From IMG/VR virus record IMGVR_UViG_3300029993_000005, positions 62,001-126,000 of that record: 64,000 nucleotides of DNA. One strand, 5' to 3'. Below the pieces are notes generated by a model. That model saw nothing but the letters and a program-made list of their open reading frames with translations, had not been told where the DNA came from and did not search any database. Positions within the stretch are counted from its first letter, which is position 1, and each line of letters opens with the position of its first letter. Of this stretch, positions 1 to 30,007 are shown one piece after another. The translations under genes were made by a program, and so were the position numbers.

Positions 1-996
1 CACCCGCCTACGGACTTGGCACACGTGCTTACGTGTCTCTACATCAACGTCTAAGCCCCGGACCCAGGTTTGAAAGAAGTCCTCTGTCTTGATGATCAGT
101 TCTTTACATTCGGATAAATCTTCAGTCAGGACCAGGGCTAAGTCAGATTTTGATTTGTAGTTCTTAATAATTGCGATGTTAGTCAGGGACGCCCAATCAG
201 AAGGTCCTACATCAGCACCATCTTGAATCACCAACTTTACCAAATCGAACTTCGAGTGCGGTATCAGTTTCAAGTCTTCTCTATGCTCCAACACAATATT
301 GTGCAACTTGTATTTCGGCTCGTGATTGACCAATGTTATGTTGAAATCTTGAGCACTATTGAACTCGATATGATGGAAATACTTGGGTAGGGACTCTCCA
401 AAATTAGTCTGATACAGGGTGCCGCAGTAATGCGTGTTACGAATCCTGTGTGCCGTATGTAAGTGACCGCCAATTGCCACAGCCTTTGACTTGGACAATG
501 ACTCATCGGTAGCTAAACGTCCGCTATCACCTTTCGAGCCATAGACCTCGTTGTGAAATATGTTAAGGGCATTAGGATCGAAATTGGTAGAAGGATAAGG
601 CAAGAATCTTACGTCCACACCATCAACGGTTATTGATTTAGGACGGGTAAAATATCGAACATTGGGTTGCTTGAAATTCTGTAGAATTTGAAGGCTGTGA
701 CCGGTGTCCGGGGTCAGTCCGTAGAGATCATGATTTCCAGTCATCAAATAAAACGTAAAATCAGGATTGCTGGAAAACAGTCCCGAGAGAGCCAACATGC
801 CAGGATAGCTCCCCCTAGGCCCGTCAAAGATATCACCAGGAAATATGATTTTGTTCAGGCCTTTTGAACGTCCATAGGCCAGTACTTTATCAACCTCAGA
901 AACTACAAACTGGTCGGGGTCCTCTATGTATTTCGATAGTCCACCAGTTCCATCTGAGGCGGTAAGATGCAAGTCACCAACGCAAAGCAGCTCCAC
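1..996 (-). CDS. SbcD/Mre11-like metallophosphoesterase nuclease (3' end runs off the window)
   Basis: Not in ORF track; translated by hand from GTG at 994-996 with no stop to position 1. Motifs GDLH, GDIFD, GNHD, GHLH and YCGTLYQTNFGE. Confidence 0.85.
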   Translation of the reverse strand, partial: MELLCVGDLHLTASDGTGGLSKYIEDPDQFVVSEVDKVLAYGRSKGLNKIIFPGDIFDGPRGSYPGMLALSGLFSSNPDFTFYLMTGNHDLYGLTPDTGHSLQILQNFKQPNVRYFTRPKSITVDGVDVRFLPYPSTNFDPNALNIFHNEVYGSKGDSGRLATDESLSKSKAVAIGGHLHTAHRIRNTHYCGTLYQTNFGESLPKYFHHIEFNSAQDFNITLVNHEPKYKLHNIVLEHREDLKLIPHSKFDLVKLVIQDGADVGPSDWASLTNIAIIKNYKSKSDLALVLTEDLSECKELIIKTEDFFQTWVRGLDVDVETRKHVCQVRRRV

Positions 997-1966: not shown

Positions 1967-1991
1967 CTCGTTGATAGATTTAAGAATATTG

Positions 1992-2219
1992 TCAGTAGCT
2001 AGGGATGGGGGGTGGGGGTGGGGACGAAGTATTCATTGAATGGTTGGTAGCCGTTGTGGTCATATTCTGGGTGGTCCCAGTCCCAGTCACCACCCAAGCC
2101 TTTCTAATTTGCTCTCCAATACTCGATGCAAGTTCTGTTTCGTAACATCGTGACCCCACGGACATCTCTTCTATTACTTGAACCGTGTCCTTGCCCGTGC
2201 TCTTCTTATAGTCTGCCAT
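1992..2219 (-). CDS. hypothetical protein, Thr/Pro-rich C-terminus
   Basis: 75 aa ORF packed against 2223..2822. Confidence 0.5.
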   Translation of the reverse strand: MADYKKSTGKDTVQVIEEMSVGSRCYETELASSIGEQIRKAWVVTGTGTTQNMTTTATNHSMNTSSPPPPPIPSY

Positions 2220-2222
2220 TTC

Positions 2223-2822
2223 TCAACCCTCTTTCTCAAACATGCGCTGGTTGATAATAAGCCATGAATGAGGCCCCAACTTGTTCAGGTCTAGGGCAAC
2301 GAGTCTTAGCCAAGCTGTCAACACTGGTGACCCCGAAATGTAGGCTCGTAGTTCCTCAGTGAACTCAACATGGGTTATGGAAGAGACCAAATCTTTAACT
2401 GAGGTCAAAGCCTTAATCTCACCGTAAGTTTTCTTGTGTCGATCTCTGTTGTTCGTGATCTGGATCCTGGAATTAAATCCTTGTTCAAGCCTAGTTGTTA
2501 AAAATGATTGTATCAATTCTAGCAAACCTTTGAAAACTAACAATGATTCTACATGAGGTTCAGGTAGCAACAAGATGGGTGCCAACGAAAAAGAAATAAG
2601 AGTTCCACTTAGATAGACATTTGCTTCCTTGTAGCCTACCTTAGTTCTAGTGAATCTGAAGCTTATGAACTGGGTCAACACGTCTAGACGGGTTTTAACA
2701 CAGTCCCTAACATAAGATTCTTCTGTCGCATGTTCAGCTCTTCTATTTGTGTACGGATGTCCTGAAAACAGAATACATCCATTGTTATTAATTGCTTCGT
2801 CTAGAATTTGTAGGGCATTCAT
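2223..2822 (-). CDS. hypothetical protein
   Basis: 199 aa ORF with GAGG RBS. Confidence 0.65.
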   Translation of the reverse strand: MNALQILDEAINNNGCILFSGHPYTNRRAEHATEESYVRDCVKTRLDVLTQFISFRFTRTKVGYKEANVYLSGTLISFSLAPILLLPEPHVESLLVFKGLLELIQSFLTTRLEQGFNSRIQITNNRDRHKKTYGEIKALTSVKDLVSSITHVEFTEELRAYISGSPVLTAWLRLVALDLNKLGPHSWLIINQRMFEKEG

Positions 2823-2834
2823 TTGGTCCTCAGT

Positions 2835-2921
2835 TTAATGTTGGTGCGTGCGTGCTTGTTGTAATTTATCACTTTCGTTGGCTTCTTGATGCTTGTTTGG
2901 TAATTCCAGTTCACTCTTCAT
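2835..2921 (-). CDS. possible 28-aa leader peptide (MKSELELPNKHQEANESDKLQQARTHQH)
   Basis: GAGGA RBS directly after AGTAAATA box; very short. Confidence 0.3.
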   Translation of the reverse strand: MKSELELPNKHQEANESDKLQQARTHQH

Positions 2922-2932
2922 TCCTCAGCTTT

Positions 2933-2940
2933 TATTTACT
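2933..2940 (-). promoter_or_regulatory. AGTAAATA box
   Basis: TATTTACT on +, at head of the minus-strand gene run. Confidence 0.55.
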
Positions 2941-2980
2941 AGAGTCCTCAATGTTGGGTAGCTAGGTTGGTTCTAGATCA

Positions 2981-3040
2981 AAAAGTTAATATGGAATTTC
3001 TCTATAAGATAGGTAAGTTTCCTGTTTGTATTAACTATAG
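2981..3040. repeat. ~60-bp imperfect direct repeat, copy 1 (copy 2 at 3779-3838)
   Basis: aaaagttaatatgg...ctgtttgtattaact(a/g)tag shared between both copies. Confidence 0.85.
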
Positions 3041-3069
3041 CGTGTGCTGTGCTGTGCTGTGATGTGCTG
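3041..3069. repeat. short (GTGCT)n tandem repeat
   Basis: cgtgtgctgtgctgtgctgtgatgtgctg. Confidence 0.7.
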
Positions 3070-3092
3070 GGGTTCCAGATTTAAGCTTAAAC

Positions 3093-3197
3093 TCGCGTTG
3101 TTGGAACCCTGTAACCAAAGTCGCGTTGTTGGCAGGGGGAGTGGGTAGGCTCAGCTATCGACTCTTCTCTTCTTTTATAACGTAACAACGCGACTTT
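3093..3197. repeat. iteron-like TCGCGTTGTT repeats
   Basis: tcgcgttgttgg at 3093-3104 and 3121-3132; inverted copy aacaacgcgacttt at 3184-3197 pairs with 3117-3130. Confidence 0.7.
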
Positions 3198-3365
3198 AGT
3201 CGAATAACAGCGGAAAAACAGCCAAAAACGCAAAAATACCCAATGATAGATTACCCTTAAACCCCAATCTATCCCCCACCCCACTCCAGCCAATAATGGA
3301 GAATAACCCCCCAAGTCTAGAGGACTATGAAGTTTAAAGTCCTTTTATAATAGTTGGCACCATCG

Positions 3366-3397
3366 TCCAAGCGTACATATTTTTAGATCCGCCGTTT
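3366..3397. repeat. 32-bp perfect inverted repeat, left arm
   Basis: tccaagcgtacatatttttagatccgccgttt is the exact reverse complement of 3858-3889. Confidence 0.95.
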
Positions 3398-3778
3398 CAA
3401 TTAGAGATACGCGCCTACGGCGCAAAACAATTTAGAGACCTTCAAAACTAAAGTCGACTGTGGTTTTAGGGTTTAAAAAAGAAATATGCATGAAGGGGCA
3501 AAGCCCCGAATGCAATTGGCAAGCAGCGCTAGCTGCGCAGCCAATACCAAACAAAACAGAATCTAAAATGAGGTTGTTGTGGTTGTTATATATTGAGGGC
3601 TTACGCCCTCCCTGCCCAAAAATACGGATTCTCCTGCGGGGCATTCGCCCCTTGGTGAATTTCCGTATTTTGTGTTCAGGAAAACCTAAAAACCAAAACC
3701 ACAATCTACATTTTAATACATATCAGAAAATATATCGTAAAAAGCATAAAAAACACTATTAAAACAGGCCTTTAGGCC

Positions 3779-3838
3779 AAAAGTTAATATGGGATTTGTC
3801 TATAGAATAGATAAAATCTCTGTTTGTATTAACTGTAG
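3779..3838. repeat. ~60-bp imperfect direct repeat, copy 2
   Basis: matches 2981-3040; ends in an AGTAAATA box (3837-3844). Confidence 0.85.
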
Positions 3839-3857
3839 TAAATATAGGGTGTAGTGA

Positions 3858-3889
3858 AAACGGCGGATCTAAAAATATGTACGCTTGGA
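3858..3889. repeat. 32-bp perfect inverted repeat, right arm
   Basis: aaacggcggatctaaaaatatgtacgcttgga; overlaps the ATG at 3877. Confidence 0.95.
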
Positions 3890-5967
3890 GAAAACAATTT
3901 ATGGGCACCAACACTAAAAGATTTGGACATTTGATTGAATTTGTAGACTCGCTGCCTGGCATGGGCAAGACTGAAGCAGCAATAAATTTGATGGCTGAGC
4001 ATCTTCTATCGGATGTGCCTGGGCTTCTCATCTACGTGGCACCAACGCATGAACTGCTATTGCGCGTGAAAGATGATCGATTGATTCCATTGCTGCGTCA
4101 ACGCAAAGCCACACCTCGTCAACTGGGGTCCATTCGTTCATACGACAGTAAAGTCAAATCTGATCTTTTTTTAGGATCCGTCGTTGCGTCCATACGTCGA
4201 GACATAGAAGGTGGGTACGAGGCCAAAGGTAATGTAAAAATAAATGCACAGGTGAACGGCGTGTTACTCGTCACGCATTCTGCTTTCTTTCGTTTGCCAA
4301 TGGCTTTGAAAAATAAGGAGCACGTTCAAATTATTTTTGACGAAGCTCGCAAGTGTGTGTTCGAGCCCTCAACACTACCTATGACCGACAAAGAAGAAGA
4401 GCTGTTCAATCAGTATCTTCAAGAGGACACGCTTCCTGGAACTTCAGCCTTCAAGAAAATTGTCTTCAATTCCTCAATTGAGGTCCAAGCTGAACTGAAG
4501 GCCAAGCTCGAAGTATGGAAAAAGAAACGTAAGGTCCATGCTGCAGCTTATGGGCGGTTCATATCCATGGTCGAATCTTTAGAGCTGGGGACCACTGAGG
4601 TCTACTGTTTGCGCCGCGAGTCTAAGAACCACCGCCAAACAACGTTTCAATTTTACGAAGTTCATATCCCATCCAAGATTTTTTCGGGGTGGAAACGCGT
4701 GATCGTCATGTCTGCCTTTTTAAAGAAAACTCAGTTATGGGCCATGTTTTGCCGGTCGACCTTCGTTCTTAATGGAAAGTCTCAACGTATGGGCCAGCGG
4801 AAGGACGGGGCTTGGATTCCAGTACCTGCCGGTCGAAATGACACTGCCTACTATCACCTGAAGGACATAACGCAAACCTTCATCCCAAAGTATAGACAAC
4901 GTGAACAACAGATATTGAAACGTTATGGTCAAGCAGTTATTGTTTCCTTGACTGGGACGAGCAAGACTAAAGCTACGTGGAAACATTTGATTTCCTCGAC
5001 CAAACTCAATGGTATATTTGTTAAAGATAAAGAGGCAGCTCAACACTATCAGGAATCGTTCAAAATTTTCTGCCGAAGTCATGCTAAGCAGGTATCAAAA
5101 CTAACGTCTCTCGATTTAAAACGCATCATAAATCCTACTACTGCTGGTGCAGAAACTTTGAGTGAGTTTGGGCAAGCTTTGAGAGACTGGGTTGACTCTG
5201 TGGAAAAAGTCGCAGATGCTCCGTACCTTTGGTACTTGCGCCACGGTCTTAGTGTTGCTAAACAATGGTTCACTAGTGACACAGGATTGGACCGCCCATT
5301 GTTTCTCGCCAATAAAAATCATATGTCTAAGCTTCAGCGTAGTTATCCTCAGGCCAAGCAGCGATTAGAATTTTTACCACACTCCTGCCATGGTCTGGAC
5401 AACTACAAAGACCATTGCATGGTCCTGTTTCAGGCCGCAACTAATCCTAAAAAAGAGGCTCGTGACTTTTATGAAAGCCAAATACCCTGGTATGACTACA
5501 ATCAAGATCACATCGTTGAGACGGCTATTCAGGCGGTGACCCGCACATCTATACGCGACACCACACAATCGGATCCAGTACTGATTGTTGTGCCTGATCC
5601 TTACCTGGCTGCATTGTTGAGCGAACGTCTTAATGATGCACCTATAGAATATGCCAATGAAAAATATGGTGTTCCCTCATTCAGCATTCTGTATATAACC
5701 AAACCTGATCTGACCGTTACTGAACGTGGACGTAAATTTAGAGACACTGAAAGTGGTAAGACTTCTGCACAAAAAGTTAAAGACTCGCGAGCGCTTAGTC
5801 CTTTTTGGGGCAAACTCAACAGCAAGACAGTCATGTTGTCTAAAGCTCGTAAACAATTCAAAGAGACTGGCGATGATAAGGCATTCGAGAAATGTCAAAC
5901 TCTGTTGAAAGAGCAGGAACTACTGTCTGAACAACATGCTAAATGGGTTCGAGAAAGTCAGTGGTGA
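3877..5967 (+). CDS. SF2-like helicase/ATPase, candidate origin-binding or replication protein (start could be 3901)
   Basis: Walker A SLPGMGKT, YVAPTHELL, LVTHSAF, Walker B IFDEARK, VMSAF, HGLDNY, QAVTRTSIR. Confidence 0.7.
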   Translation: MYAWRKQFMGTNTKRFGHLIEFVDSLPGMGKTEAAINLMAEHLLSDVPGLLIYVAPTHELLLRVKDDRLIPLLRQRKATPRQLGSIRSYDSKVKSDLFLGSVVASIRRDIEGGYEAKGNVKINAQVNGVLLVTHSAFFRLPMALKNKEHVQIIFDEARKCVFEPSTLPMTDKEEELFNQYLQEDTLPGTSAFKKIVFNSSIEVQAELKAKLEVWKKKRKVHAAAYGRFISMVESLELGTTEVYCLRRESKNHRQTTFQFYEVHIPSKIFSGWKRVIVMSAFLKKTQLWAMFCRSTFVLNGKSQRMGQRKDGAWIPVPAGRNDTAYYHLKDITQTFIPKYRQREQQILKRYGQAVIVSLTGTSKTKATWKHLISSTKLNGIFVKDKEAAQHYQESFKIFCRSHAKQVSKLTSLDLKRIINPTTAGAETLSEFGQALRDWVDSVEKVADAPYLWYLRHGLSVAKQWFTSDTGLDRPLFLANKNHMSKLQRSYPQAKQRLEFLPHSCHGLDNYKDHCMVLFQAATNPKKEARDFYESQIPWYDYNQDHIVETAIQAVTRTSIRDTTQSDPVLIVVPDPYLAALLSERLNDAPIEYANEKYGVPSFSILYITKPDLTVTERGRKFRDTESGKTSAQKVKDSRALSPFWGKLNSKTVMLSKARKQFKETGDDKAFEKCQTLLKEQELLSEQHAKWVRESQW

Positions 5968-5990
5968 GGAACCTAAACTTTTAGCCTCTT

Positions 5991-5998
5991 AGTAAATA
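5991..5998 (+). promoter_or_regulatory. AGTAAATA box
   Basis: intergenic, upstream of 6089. Confidence 0.55.
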
Positions 5999-6088
5999 AC
6001 AAGAGTGACAGAAGCAAACGTGCATAGGCACGCACCCAACCAAGATTAAAGCACCAACATTAAATAATTCAACAACCAAAGGAAAATT

Positions 6089-29930: not shown

Positions 29931-30007
29931 GGGCCGGTGGCGCAATTGGTTAGCGCGGAGAATTCATAATTCTAAGGTTGTCGGTTCAAGTCCGGCTCGG
30001 CCCACCA
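29931..30007 (+). tRNA. tRNA with CAT anticodon, probably Ile2 (lysidine) rather than Met
   Basis: full cloverleaf, 7-bp acceptor GGGCCGG/TCGGCCC, TTCAAGT T-loop, encoded CCA; C4:G69 and C5:G68 pairs as in bacterial tRNA-Ile2. Confidence 0.9.

What the first reader, a model, noticed from the sequence alone, without database searches (positions are those of the whole stretch)
2823..3889. Origin-like or invertible divergence region: 32-bp perfect inverted repeat, 60-bp direct repeat and iterons beside an SF2 helicase
Seen: the only ~1-kb non-coding stretch, at the point where gene direction flips. It holds a perfect 32-bp IR (3366-3397 / 3858-3889) bracketing ~460 bp, a ~60-bp direct repeat (2981-3040 / 3779-3838), three TCGCGTTGTT copies, and outward-facing AGTAAATA boxes. 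The right IR arm overlaps the ATG of the SF2-like gene. Inference: a replication origin bound by the adjacent helicase-like protein, or an invertible segment that would move the 3837 promoter box away from that gene.
Basis: partly seen in the sequence, partly recalled or inferred. Interest (0 to 1): 0.65.

Follow-up and report, generated by a model that had tools for sequence, protein, structure and literature searches.

The report
Candidate replication origin, jumbo phage
The repeats are real and mark a 1.1-kb non-coding control region, conserved in relatives of Ralstonia phage phiRSL1, that sits where transcription diverges beside a helicase gene; it is most likely the phage's replication origin with its two promoters, not a flipping switch.

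Summary
Present as described: a perfect 32-bp inverted repeat (IR; 3366-3397 / 3858-3889), a 60-nt direct repeat (83% identical), three exact copies of one 10-mer, and outward-facing AGTAAATA boxes. The stretch is the largest non-coding gap of a 230-kb jumbo phage from peat.

The boxes are the phage's main promoter-like motif: 47 copies, 46 co-oriented with genes.

Inside the IR lie the genome's only cluster of GC-rich mini-hairpins and the window's AT-richest 60-mer.

Helicase relatives (21-56% identity, including phiRSL1) show the same layout. An XPD/DinG-like helicase is the first gene of a divergent junction. Promoter boxes face outward. GCGAAGC hairpin motifs sit on the top strand in the left half and on the bottom strand in the right half. 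An IR often reaches the helicase leader.

AT skew switches here in this phage and at the matching junction in phiRSL1, after allowing for gene strand.

Inversion is not supported. Nine of nine assemblies share one orientation, and no recombinase was found.

Best reading is a bidirectional replication origin with embedded promoters (confidence about 0.4). Rivals are an RNA leader that controls helicase translation, a DNA-looping operator pair, and a new non-coding RNA.

The parts
2823..3900 (.). Whole non-coding divergence region (1,078 bp) between a leftward ORFan gene and the helicase gene
   Evidence: ORF list. No gene is called here on independent contigs. Largest intergenic gap in the genome.
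2933..2940 (-). Left-facing AGTAAATA promoter-like box, 110 nt upstream of the start of gene 2223-2822
   Evidence: The motif has 47 copies in the genome, 46 co-oriented with genes. It occurs in 27 of 146 upstream regions against 2.0 expected.
2981..3040 (+). Copy 1 of the 60-nt direct repeat. It carries the upstream part of the helicase promoter region but has no AGTAAATA box after it.
3043..3069 (.). (TGTGC) x 5.4 microsatellite
   Evidence: Contigs in two runs end here with loose ends.
3089..3200 (.). Iteron-like array. Two direct 16-mers (3089-3104, 3117-3132) and one inverted copy (3184-3200) share the exact 10-mer TCGCGTTGTT.
   Evidence: These are the only three exact copies in 64 kb.
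3366..3397 (.). Left arm of the perfect 32-bp inverted repeat
3411..3671 (.). Cluster of five perfect GC-rich mini-hairpins (3411-3423, 3495-3507, 3523-3536, 3596-3609, 3638-3651), some with longer outer stems. An inner imperfect IR lies at 3450-3475 / 3687-3712.
   Evidence: 5 hairpins in 500 bp against 0.23 per kb genome-wide, and no other 500-bp window has more than 2. Fold z-scores of the interior are -8.6 (+ strand) and -7.5 (- strand).
3703..3762 (.). AT-richest 60-mer of the whole window (18% G+C); a candidate DNA-unwinding element
   Evidence: quantile 0.0001.
3779..3838 (+). Copy 2 of the 60-nt direct repeat, directly upstream of and overlapping the right promoter box
3837..3844 (+). 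Right-facing AGTAAATA promoter-like box for the helicase operon; it lies inside the IR
3858..3889 (.). Right arm of the 32-bp IR, in the helicase 5' leader. Its last four bases are the GGAG ribosome-binding site (3886-3889).
3901..5967 (+). Helicase-like gene (688 aa). SF2 ATPase with an XPD/DinG-like fold. First gene of the rightward replication module.
   Evidence: Weak Pfam DEAD match. Model with pLDDT 80.6. Foldseek best matches are DinG and XPD, E = 1.5e-8. The start codon is inferred.
2223..2822 (-). First gene of the leftward block (199 aa), with no relatives found outside this phage

Best explanation
The region is the main cis-acting control region of a phiRSL1-like jumbo phage. It is most likely its bidirectional origin of replication, with the two divergent promoters built into it.

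Proposed mechanism (inferred, not shown):
1. A protein binds the iteron-like repeats (3089-3200) and the related GTTGT-type motifs.
2. The very AT-rich stretch (3690-3860) melts, possibly helped by transcription from the flanking promoter.
3. The GC-rich mini-hairpins then fold on the exposed single strands.
4. These hairpins act as strand-specific entry or priming signals for the phage's own primase and helicases, so that synthesis leaves in both directions.

The 32-bp IR brackets this hairpin and AT-rich module together with the helicase promoter. I take it to be the outermost pair of the dyad symmetry seen in relatives. It may also couple helicase expression to the state of the origin.

Shown here: the anatomy, its uniqueness in the genome, its conservation in relatives, and the compositional switch. 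Inferred: every biochemical step.
For: 1. Origin-type anatomy in one place:
- three exact iteron copies found nowhere else in 64 kb;
- the genome's only cluster of GC mini-hairpins;
- the AT-richest 60-mer of the window.

2. Position. It is the main divergence of gene direction in the 230-kb genome. To the right lie the helicase, ThyX, a Dda-like helicase and the DNA polymerase; to the left lies an SbcD-like nuclease. The phage encodes its own DnaB-like helicase and Toprim primase.

3. Conservation of layout without conservation of sequence. In relatives at 21-56% helicase identity, including the isolate phiRSL1, the helicase is the first gene of a divergent junction. The gap is 390-610 bp and is flanked by outward GTAAATA boxes.

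4. Hairpin motifs in relatives. GCGAAGC/GCTTCGC occurs at 5.8 per kb in those gaps against 0.27 per kb outside. GCGAAGC lies in the left part (median relative position 0.27) and GCTTCGC in the right part (0.60); Mann-Whitney P = 5e-5. The stable hairpin form therefore sits on opposite strands in the two halves. A 2026 review reports such mini-hairpins as frequent at phage and plasmid priming sites: G4, St-1 and alpha3 origins, and RSF1010 ssiA (PMC13037366).

5. Skew. In a per-gene regression with gene strand as covariate, AT skew is explained mainly by position (0.047 against 0.010). The best switch points are 66 kb (this locus lies at 64.8-65.9 kb) and 190 kb, about half a genome apart. In phiRSL1 the best switch is at 204 kb, which is its helicase junction, with the second at 88 kb.

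6. Strand symmetry. The hairpins are almost purely Watson-Crick and fold equally on both strands: -142.4 against -142.8 kcal/mol, with about 5% G-U pairs. This fits a DNA-level element.
Against: - No experiment or read-depth profile shows initiation here. Only assembled contigs were available.
- Skew cannot tell origin from terminus. At four-fold degenerate sites the strand that runs away from the junction is C>G, which under the usual bacterial rule would mark a terminus. The four-fold breakpoints (about 58 and 206 kb for GC, 74 and 206 kb for AT) are near this locus but not at it.
- The window itself has no GCGAAGC copy. Its hairpins have other loops, and only two fit the GCGNNAGC class.
- No recognisable initiator protein is adjacent. 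The left neighbour has no relatives and differs between relatives.
- An origin does not by itself explain why the right IR arm lies in the helicase leader 2-17 nt before the start codon in five lineages.
- The opposite-strand polarity of the GCGAAGC motifs could equally come from each promoter carrying its own upstream binding sites.
Confidence: 0.4

Rival explanations
1. RNA-level control of the helicase. A long rightward transcript that starts upstream of the left arm folds so that the 32-nt left arm pairs with the leader. This hides the GGAG and may create an RNase III site. Transcripts from the internal AGTAAATA promoter lack the left arm and are translated. This is the design known (from my memory of the literature) for T4 genes e, soc, 49 and I-TevI.
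For: - The right arm ends 12 nt before ATG 3901 and contains the GGAG.
- The promoter box lies between the arms, 13 nt before the right arm.
- A significant IR links the region between the two boxes with the helicase leader in the window, L006, L014, L015 and phiRSL1 (each better than all 300 shuffles). It is marginal in L010.
- The arm sequences differ between lineages.
- The single mismatches in L014 and L015 include G-T pairs on the helicase-sense strand (read).
Against: - No promoter for the long transcript is evident. The sigma-70 scan is at chance level.
- In relatives the left arm starts 1-90 nt from the left-facing box, which leaves little room for a rightward promoter.
- The arm covers a recognisable ribosome-binding site only in the window.
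- There is no consistent strand bias in folding energy across lineages.
- No significant leader IR was found in L011, L017 or L022.
- No RNA data were available.
Confidence: 0.2
2. A pair of inverted protein-binding sites (operators) that loop the DNA to regulate the divergent promoters. The arms are sites for one phage regulator, and the hairpins and iterons are further regulatory sites.
For: - The arms share short sequence motifs across lineages that are otherwise unalignable. One is AAGCGTA followed by C or A and then ATA, seen in the window and L015. The other is CGTACAT-like, seen in L006, L010, L011 and phiRSL1.
- GTTGT-type repeats recur around the helicase promoter in L010, L022, phiRSL1 and the window.
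- The structure is strand-symmetric.
Against: - The shared motifs are short and their orientation is not constant.
- The arm motif occurs in no other intergenic region of the genome.
- No candidate regulator has been identified.
- The idea does not explain the hairpin cluster or the skew switch.
Confidence: 0.12
3. A new structured non-coding RNA gene of about 460-520 nt, closed by the 32-bp stem.
For: - Fold z-scores are -14.9 with the arms and -8.6 without them.
- Relatives also fold better than shuffles, z = -2.4 to -8.1.
Against: - No Rfam match, even at E up to 1.
- Both strands fold equally well.
- No promoter or terminator was identified.
- The segment contains the helicase promoter and leader, which is odd for an RNA gene.
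- No covariation test was possible: the population is clonal and relatives cannot be aligned.
Confidence: 0.1
4. An invertible promoter segment (inverton). Recombination between the arms flips 3398-3857 and turns the helicase promoter away from its gene.
For: - The geometry is that of a classical inverton. The IR encloses the promoter box, which lies next to the right arm, in the window and in L006, L014, L015 and phiRSL1.
- Perfect identity over 32 bp could reflect gene conversion between the arms.
- A distantly related lineage (Matilda and BcepSauron) has invertible segments, but these are kilobase-scale and terminal (preprint 10.64898/2026.10.21.760668).
Against: - All nine assemblies from different samples that span both arms have the reference orientation.
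- A 151-nt contig crosses the right arm in the reference orientation, and no strand-changing joint is seen.
- No Resolvase or Phage_integrase family protein is present in the 97%-complete genome.
- The arms in relatives are only 75-94% complementary.
Confidence: 0.06
5. A relic without function: an inserted MITE-like element, or an inverted duplication that happens to persist.
For: - Terminal inverted repeats bound a 524-bp non-coding segment.
- The window's gap is about twice as long as in relatives.
- The 60-nt direct repeat suggests a past duplication or insertion.
Against: - The segment is single-copy in the genome.
- There is no target-site duplication.
- The IR-plus-promoter geometry recurs in distant relatives at the same place.
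- The region is invariant across about ten samples, while nearby sites vary.
Confidence: 0.05

Closest known systems
RSF1010 oriV (iterons, GC-rich and AT-rich segments, and ssiA/ssiB hairpins on opposite strands recognised by RepB' primase)
   Same: Iteron-like repeats, an AT-rich stretch, and stable GC-rich hairpins. In relatives the stable GCGAAGC form lies on opposite strands in the two halves. ssiA contains a CCGAAGG mini-hairpin (PMC13037366).
   Different: This is a 230-kb phage with a DnaG-type Toprim primase, not RepB'. There is an array of several hairpins rather than two defined sites. No RepC-like initiator was found. Promoters are built into the flanks. Function is untested.
Complementary-strand origins of phages G4, St-1 and alpha3 (primase-recognised hairpins with GCGAAAGC or GCGTTAGC mini-hairpins)
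   Same: Mini-hairpin motifs of the GCGNAGC or GCGNNAGC class are concentrated in a non-coding region. Relatives have them at 22-fold enrichment. The window has GCGCTAGC on the + strand and GCGTAAGC on the - strand.
   Different: Those are single-stranded DNA phages. Here the genome is double-stranded, so the hairpins would need unwinding first.
T4 oriF (uvsY) and oriG (gene 34): promoter plus unwinding element, with the SF2 helicase UvsW acting on the origin R-loop (from my knowledge of the literature)
   Same: A phage-type promoter lies next to an AT-rich element. An SF2 helicase gene is adjacent. The replisome gene set is T4-like (DnaB-like helicase, primase, Dda, SbcD-like nuclease).
   Different: In T4 the unwinding element lies downstream of the promoter, whereas here the AT-rich stretch is upstream of the helicase promoter. 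The helicase is XPD/DinG-like, not UvsW-like. T4 origins have no hairpin array and no long IR.
Invertible promoter switches (fimS, hin/gin, Bacteroides invertons)
   Same: An IR of 20-30 bp encloses a few hundred bp that contain a promoter next to one arm.
   Different: No recombinase and no second orientation were seen.
T4 transcript-specific translational control (e, soc, 49, I-TevI)
   Same: A complementary segment hides the ribosome-binding site, and an internal promoter would produce a transcript that lacks it.
   Different: The arms are 460 nt apart rather than tens of nt, and no upstream promoter is known.

Membership tests
Invertible promoter segment (inverton) | Inverted repeats flank a promoter-containing segment | tested here: met
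   The IR at 3366-3397 / 3858-3889 encloses the AGTAAATA box at 3837-3844.
Invertible promoter segment (inverton) | A cognate site-specific recombinase is encoded by the element or the genome | tested here: not met
   PF00239 and PF00589 give no match at E up to 0.1 in the 97%-complete genome, and the controls were positive. Other recombinase families and host enzymes were not tested.
Invertible promoter segment (inverton) | Both orientations are present in a population | tested here: not met
   Nine of nine assemblies from different samples share one orientation. The k=31 contigs break at the arms and have no power for rare forms.
Iteron-type bidirectional origin | Clustered repeated binding sites (iterons) | tested here: met
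   Three exact copies of a 10-mer (within 16-mers at 94% identity) lie within 110 bp and nowhere else in 64 kb. Protein binding was not tested.
Iteron-type bidirectional origin | An AT-rich unwinding element | tested here: met
   3703-3762 has 18% G+C and is the AT-richest 60-mer of the window.
Iteron-type bidirectional origin | An initiator gene adjacent to or overlapping the origin | tested here: inconclusive
   The conserved neighbour is an XPD/DinG-like SF2 helicase. No known initiator domain was found.
Iteron-type bidirectional origin | A switch of compositional skew at the site that is independent of gene strand | tested here: inconclusive
   The AT-skew switch is at 66 kb here and at 204 kb in phiRSL1, with position outweighing strand. 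Four-fold-site breakpoints lie 7-9 kb away, and the sign does not separate origin from terminus.
Iteron-type bidirectional origin | Initiation of DNA synthesis at the site | not testable with these tools
   Only assembled contigs were available, with no depth profile or time course.
Single-strand initiation (priming) hairpins of the G4 / RSF1010 ssi type | Stable hairpins with GCGNAGC or GCGNNAGC-type loops | tested here: inconclusive
   Relatives carry 36 GCGAAGC/GCTTCGC copies in 6.2 kb of gaps against 25 in 94 kb outside. The window has none of these. It has five other GC hairpins, two of which fit GCGNNAGC.
Single-strand initiation (priming) hairpins of the G4 / RSF1010 ssi type | Signals lie on opposite strands for the two directions | tested here: inconclusive
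   Met in relatives (medians 0.27 against 0.60, P = 5e-5). In the window the polarity is only partial.
Single-strand initiation (priming) hairpins of the G4 / RSF1010 ssi type | Recognition by a primase | not testable with these tools
   A Toprim primase gene exists in the genome. Binding is untested.
Known RNA families (Rfam 15) | Match to a covariance model | tested here: not met
   No match at gathering score, and none at E up to 1, over 2700-4000.
MITE or IS-derived element | Terminal inverted repeats, a target-site duplication, and multiple copies | tested here: not met
   The inverted repeats are present, but there is no flanking duplication and the unit is single-copy in the genome.
Transcript-specific translational repression by long-range pairing (T4 e / soc type) | A complementary segment covers the ribosome-binding site, and an internal promoter lies between the arms | tested here: met
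   The GGAG at 3886-3889 lies in the right arm, and the box at 3837-3844 lies between the arms.
Transcript-specific translational repression by long-range pairing (T4 e / soc type) | An upstream promoter produces a transcript that contains both arms | tested here: inconclusive
   The sigma-70 scan is at chance level. No RNA runs were found.

The most novel reading that the evidence does not exclude
phiRSL1-like jumbo phages may share a previously undescribed type of origin for double-stranded DNA phages. Arrays of extraordinarily stable DNA mini-hairpins (GCGAAGC type, or other GC hairpins in this phage) sit on opposite strands in two halves. They are bracketed by a long-range inverted repeat and by divergent phage promoters. 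After unwinding they would serve as strand-specific priming or helicase-loading signals, with the adjacent XPD/DinG-like helicase as the origin-specific factor.
Probability: 0.2. Interest if true: 0.7.

Novelty: new variant of a known kind. Interest (0 to 1): 0.5.

Why it matters
I found no described replication origin for the phiRSL1 lineage of jumbo phages (Ralstonia, Xanthomonas, Burkholderia and Achromobacter phages and many uncultured relatives) in the papers I searched. This analysis gives a specific candidate of about 0.5-1 kb, with defined parts, that can be tested directly in the cultured phage phiRSL1. It also defines the lineage's main promoter-like motif, TAGTAAATA. If the hairpin arrays prove to be priming or loading signals, a mechanism known from single-stranded phages and RSF1010 would extend to large double-stranded phages. 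If the IR instead proves to be an RNA switch, it would be an unusually long-range example of transcript-specific translational control.

Tried and rejected
- Megablast of 2223-6000 against 50,697 phage records found no match.
- Rfam gave nothing at gathering score or at E up to 1.
- Reads. Only Logan k=31 contigs of peat metagenomes exist, with no RNA runs. The contigs end exactly at the IR arms, as a 31-mer graph must. They therefore say nothing about orientation or depth, and they show no variants.
- Covariation. The population is clonal across about ten samples. The only differences are at 1988-2023 and a 6-nt deletion at 4096-4101. The closest relative has 56% helicase identity and its gap cannot be aligned. 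The metagenome scan found no closer relative. No covariance model was built.
- RNA strand asymmetry. The difference in folding energy between strands changes sign among lineages and is zero in the window, so it is not informative.
- The idea that the IR arms are a second promoter class was rejected. The motif is not enriched upstream of genes.
- Global dyad symmetry tested by self-reverse-complement local alignment only recovered the best single IR.
- Skew at four-fold sites is partly at odds with all-site skew. It is kept as a caveat.
- The left neighbour (199 aa) has no relatives and no Pfam or PHROG match.
- The original phiRSL1 genome paper (Virology 2010) is not held.
- The Matilda preprint on terminal invertible segments is not about this locus.
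Full report
**Source.** The window is bases 62,001-126,000 of a 230,110-bp virus record that is 97% complete. The phage comes from peat metagenomes. No close relative exists among 50,697 phage records by DNA. By protein, the nearest isolates are Ralstonia phage phiRSL1 and jumbo phages of Xanthomonas, Burkholderia and Achromobacter, at about 24% identity to the helicase.

reproduces each repeat.
- IR arms 3366-3397 and 3858-3889: 32 nt, perfect, 460 nt apart.
- A 60-nt direct repeat at 2981-3040 and 3779-3838: 83% identical.
- Two direct copies and one inverted copy of a 16-mer that share the exact 10-mer TCGCGTTGTT. These are its only exact copies in 64 kb.
- AGTAAATA facing left at 2933-2940 and facing right at 3837-3844.

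The IR is the longest perfect IR with arms up to 3 kb apart in the whole genome, and the only long-range one. Nine independent assemblies carry the region unchanged, so it is not an artefact. Gene callers place no gene in 2823-3900.

One correction concerns the helicase start. It is most likely ATG 3901, not 3877. This gives the 688-aa product called on other contigs and fits the N-termini of relatives. A GGAG lies at 3886-3889. The right arm therefore lies in the leader and covers the ribosome-binding site.

**What the parts are.**
- AGTAAATA (fuller form TAGTAAATA) is the phage's dominant promoter-like motif. There are 47 copies against about 12 expected from base composition (my estimate). 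Forty-six are co-oriented with the local genes, mostly 20-120 nt before a start. It tops a k-mer enrichment of upstream regions: 27 of 146 regions against 2.0 expected.
- The motif is also enriched in phiRSL1: 17 copies against 2 for a reversed control pattern.
- The two boxes are thus divergent promoters, and the roughly 900 bp between them is not covered by either transcript.
- Inside the IR lie five perfect GC-rich mini-hairpins. This is the only such cluster in 230 kb, since no other 500-bp window has more than two.
- The AT-richest 60-mer of the window is at 3703-3762, with 18% G+C.
- The interior folds far better than shuffles on both strands, z = -8.6 and -7.5. The energies are equal and few G-U pairs are used. 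No Rfam family matches.

**The neighbours.**
- The helicase-like protein has a weak DEAD match and no sequence match in the PDB.
- Its model (pLDDT 80.6) best matches DinG and XPD helicases (E = 1.5e-8).
- Downstream lie ThyX, a methyltransferase-like gene, a Dda-like helicase and the DNA polymerase.
- Upstream on the other strand lies an SbcD-like nuclease.
- The genome also has a DnaB-like helicase and a Toprim primase.
- The region therefore heads the replication module.

**Relatives.** Helicase homologues at 21-56% identity came from protein, viral-contig and metagenome searches.
- Wherever enough flank is held, the helicase is the first gene of a divergent junction with a 390-610-bp gap.
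- In most lineages the gap is bounded by outward GTAAATA boxes.
- phiRSL1 has the same layout: ORF296 (SbcD-like), a 536-bp gap, then ORF295.
- The gaps cannot be aligned, but they share a 22-fold enrichment of GCGAAGC/GCTTCGC: 5.8 per kb inside against 0.27 per kb outside.
- These motifs show a polarity. GCGAAGC sits in the left part and GCTTCGC in the right part, at median relative positions 0.27 and 0.60 (P = 5e-5). The order holds in all six lineages that have both motifs.
- In one sludge relative (L026) the nested IRs share roughly one centre, so the whole gap is a large imperfect palindrome.
- GCGAAGC is the classic, extraordinarily stable DNA mini-hairpin. A 2026 review notes that such motifs are rarer than expected in genomes but frequent at priming sites of phages G4, St-1 and alpha3 and in RSF1010 ssiA (PMC13037366).
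- The window has none of these exact motifs. Two of its hairpins fit the related GCGNNAGC class.

**The long IR is also recurrent.** An IR between the inter-box region and the helicase leader beats all 300 shuffles in the window, L006, L014, L015 and phiRSL1. It is marginal in L010 and absent in L011, L017 and L022. In those five lineages the right arm ends 2-17 nt before the likely start, and the promoter box lies inside the IR. This geometry fits an inverton. It fits equally an RNA switch in which only transcripts from the internal promoter escape pairing.

**Tests of inversion.**
- No Resolvase or Phage_integrase family protein is encoded.
- Nine of nine assemblies from different samples, several built with k=141, are colinear with the window across both arms.
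- Logan contigs break at the arms, as a 31-mer graph must. One 151-nt contig crosses the right arm in the reference orientation, and no strand-changing joint is reported.
- Frequent switching is therefore unlikely. Rare switching is untested.

**Skew.**
- Cumulative AT skew has its minimum at 64-66 kb, but so does gene direction.
- In a per-gene regression with gene strand as covariate, the positional term dominates (0.047 against 0.010). The best switch points are 66 kb and 190 kb.
- phiRSL1, with gene strands assigned by third-position G+C, gives 204 kb (its helicase junction) and 88 kb.
- In both phages the two points lie about half a genome apart, as expected for bidirectional replication.
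- Caveats: at four-fold sites AT skew follows gene strand. GC skew is positional there, but its breakpoints are near 58 and 206 kb. Its sign would, by the bacterial rule, make this locus a terminus.
- Gene co-orientation and the replication-gene context favour an origin.

**Verdict.** The feature is real, unique in its genome and conserved in layout across a broad phage lineage. I rank the readings as follows.

| Reading | Confidence |
|---|---|
| Bidirectional origin with embedded divergent promoters | about 0.4 |
| RNA switch on the helicase leader | 0.2 |
| DNA-looping operator pair | 0.12 |
| New non-coding RNA | 0.1 |
| Invertible promoter segment | 0.06 |
| Functionless relic | 0.05 |

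These readings are not all exclusive. An origin whose outer IR also tunes helicase expression would fit everything seen. None of the biochemical steps has been shown.

Noticed in passing
whole genome; in the window for example 5991, 12073, 25966, 30598 (+ strand): TAGTAAATA is a genome-wide promoter-like motif with 47 copies, 46 co-oriented with genes. It is absent from upstream regions in about 116-165 kb of the genome, which suggests a temporal class. It resembles the T4 late promoter TATAAATA (from memory). It is also enriched in phiRSL1, 17 copies against 2 for the control.
   Followed up: partly
window 1988-2023: This is the only variable spot among about ten assemblies of this phage. Substitutions and small indels lie at the 3' end of the 75-aa ORF (1992-2219, - strand), and the called product length varies between 73, 75 and 78 aa.
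   Followed up: partly
window 4096-4101: One peat sample (contig L056) carries a 6-nt in-frame deletion in the helicase. This gives the 686-aa variant P0001.
   Followed up: partly
window 3043-3069: A (TGTGC) x 5.4 microsatellite lies inside the control region. Contigs in two runs end here with loose ends that look like repeat-number variants, and unrelated high-depth 31-mers also match it.
   Followed up: no
genome 1-187 and 229,924-230,110; genome 55,256-55,700 (outside the window): The first and last 187 bp of the record are 97.9% identical, so it may be a circular or terminally redundant genome that IMG/VR labels linear. A third, partial copy (83-95% identical) of the end region lies at about 55.3-55.7 kb.
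   Followed up: partly
L010:7518-7999; L022:2320-2412; window 3572-3594: GTTGT-type repeats (CCTGTTGTGT in L010, ACCTGTTGTGAA in L022, GGTTGTTG in the window and phiRSL1) recur in both orientations around the helicase promoter in distant relatives. In L010 the motif sits 11 nt before TATAAT twice, the same spacing as CTCTGTTTGT before TAAATA in the window.
   Followed up: partly
window 29931-30007: A tRNA-Met (CAT) gene lies in the rightward block.
   Followed up: no
genome about 188-190 kb (outside the window): The second AT-skew switch (about 190 kb) coincides with a convergent gene junction at 189.7-189.8 kb, just after the DnaB-like helicase gene. It is a candidate terminus.
   Followed up: no
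window 1-996 (- strand); phiRSL1 ORF296: An SbcD/Mre11-like nuclease gene lies within a few kb of the palindromic control region here and in L006. In phiRSL1 it lies directly beside it. A functional link between palindrome and nuclease is conceivable but untested.
   Followed up: no
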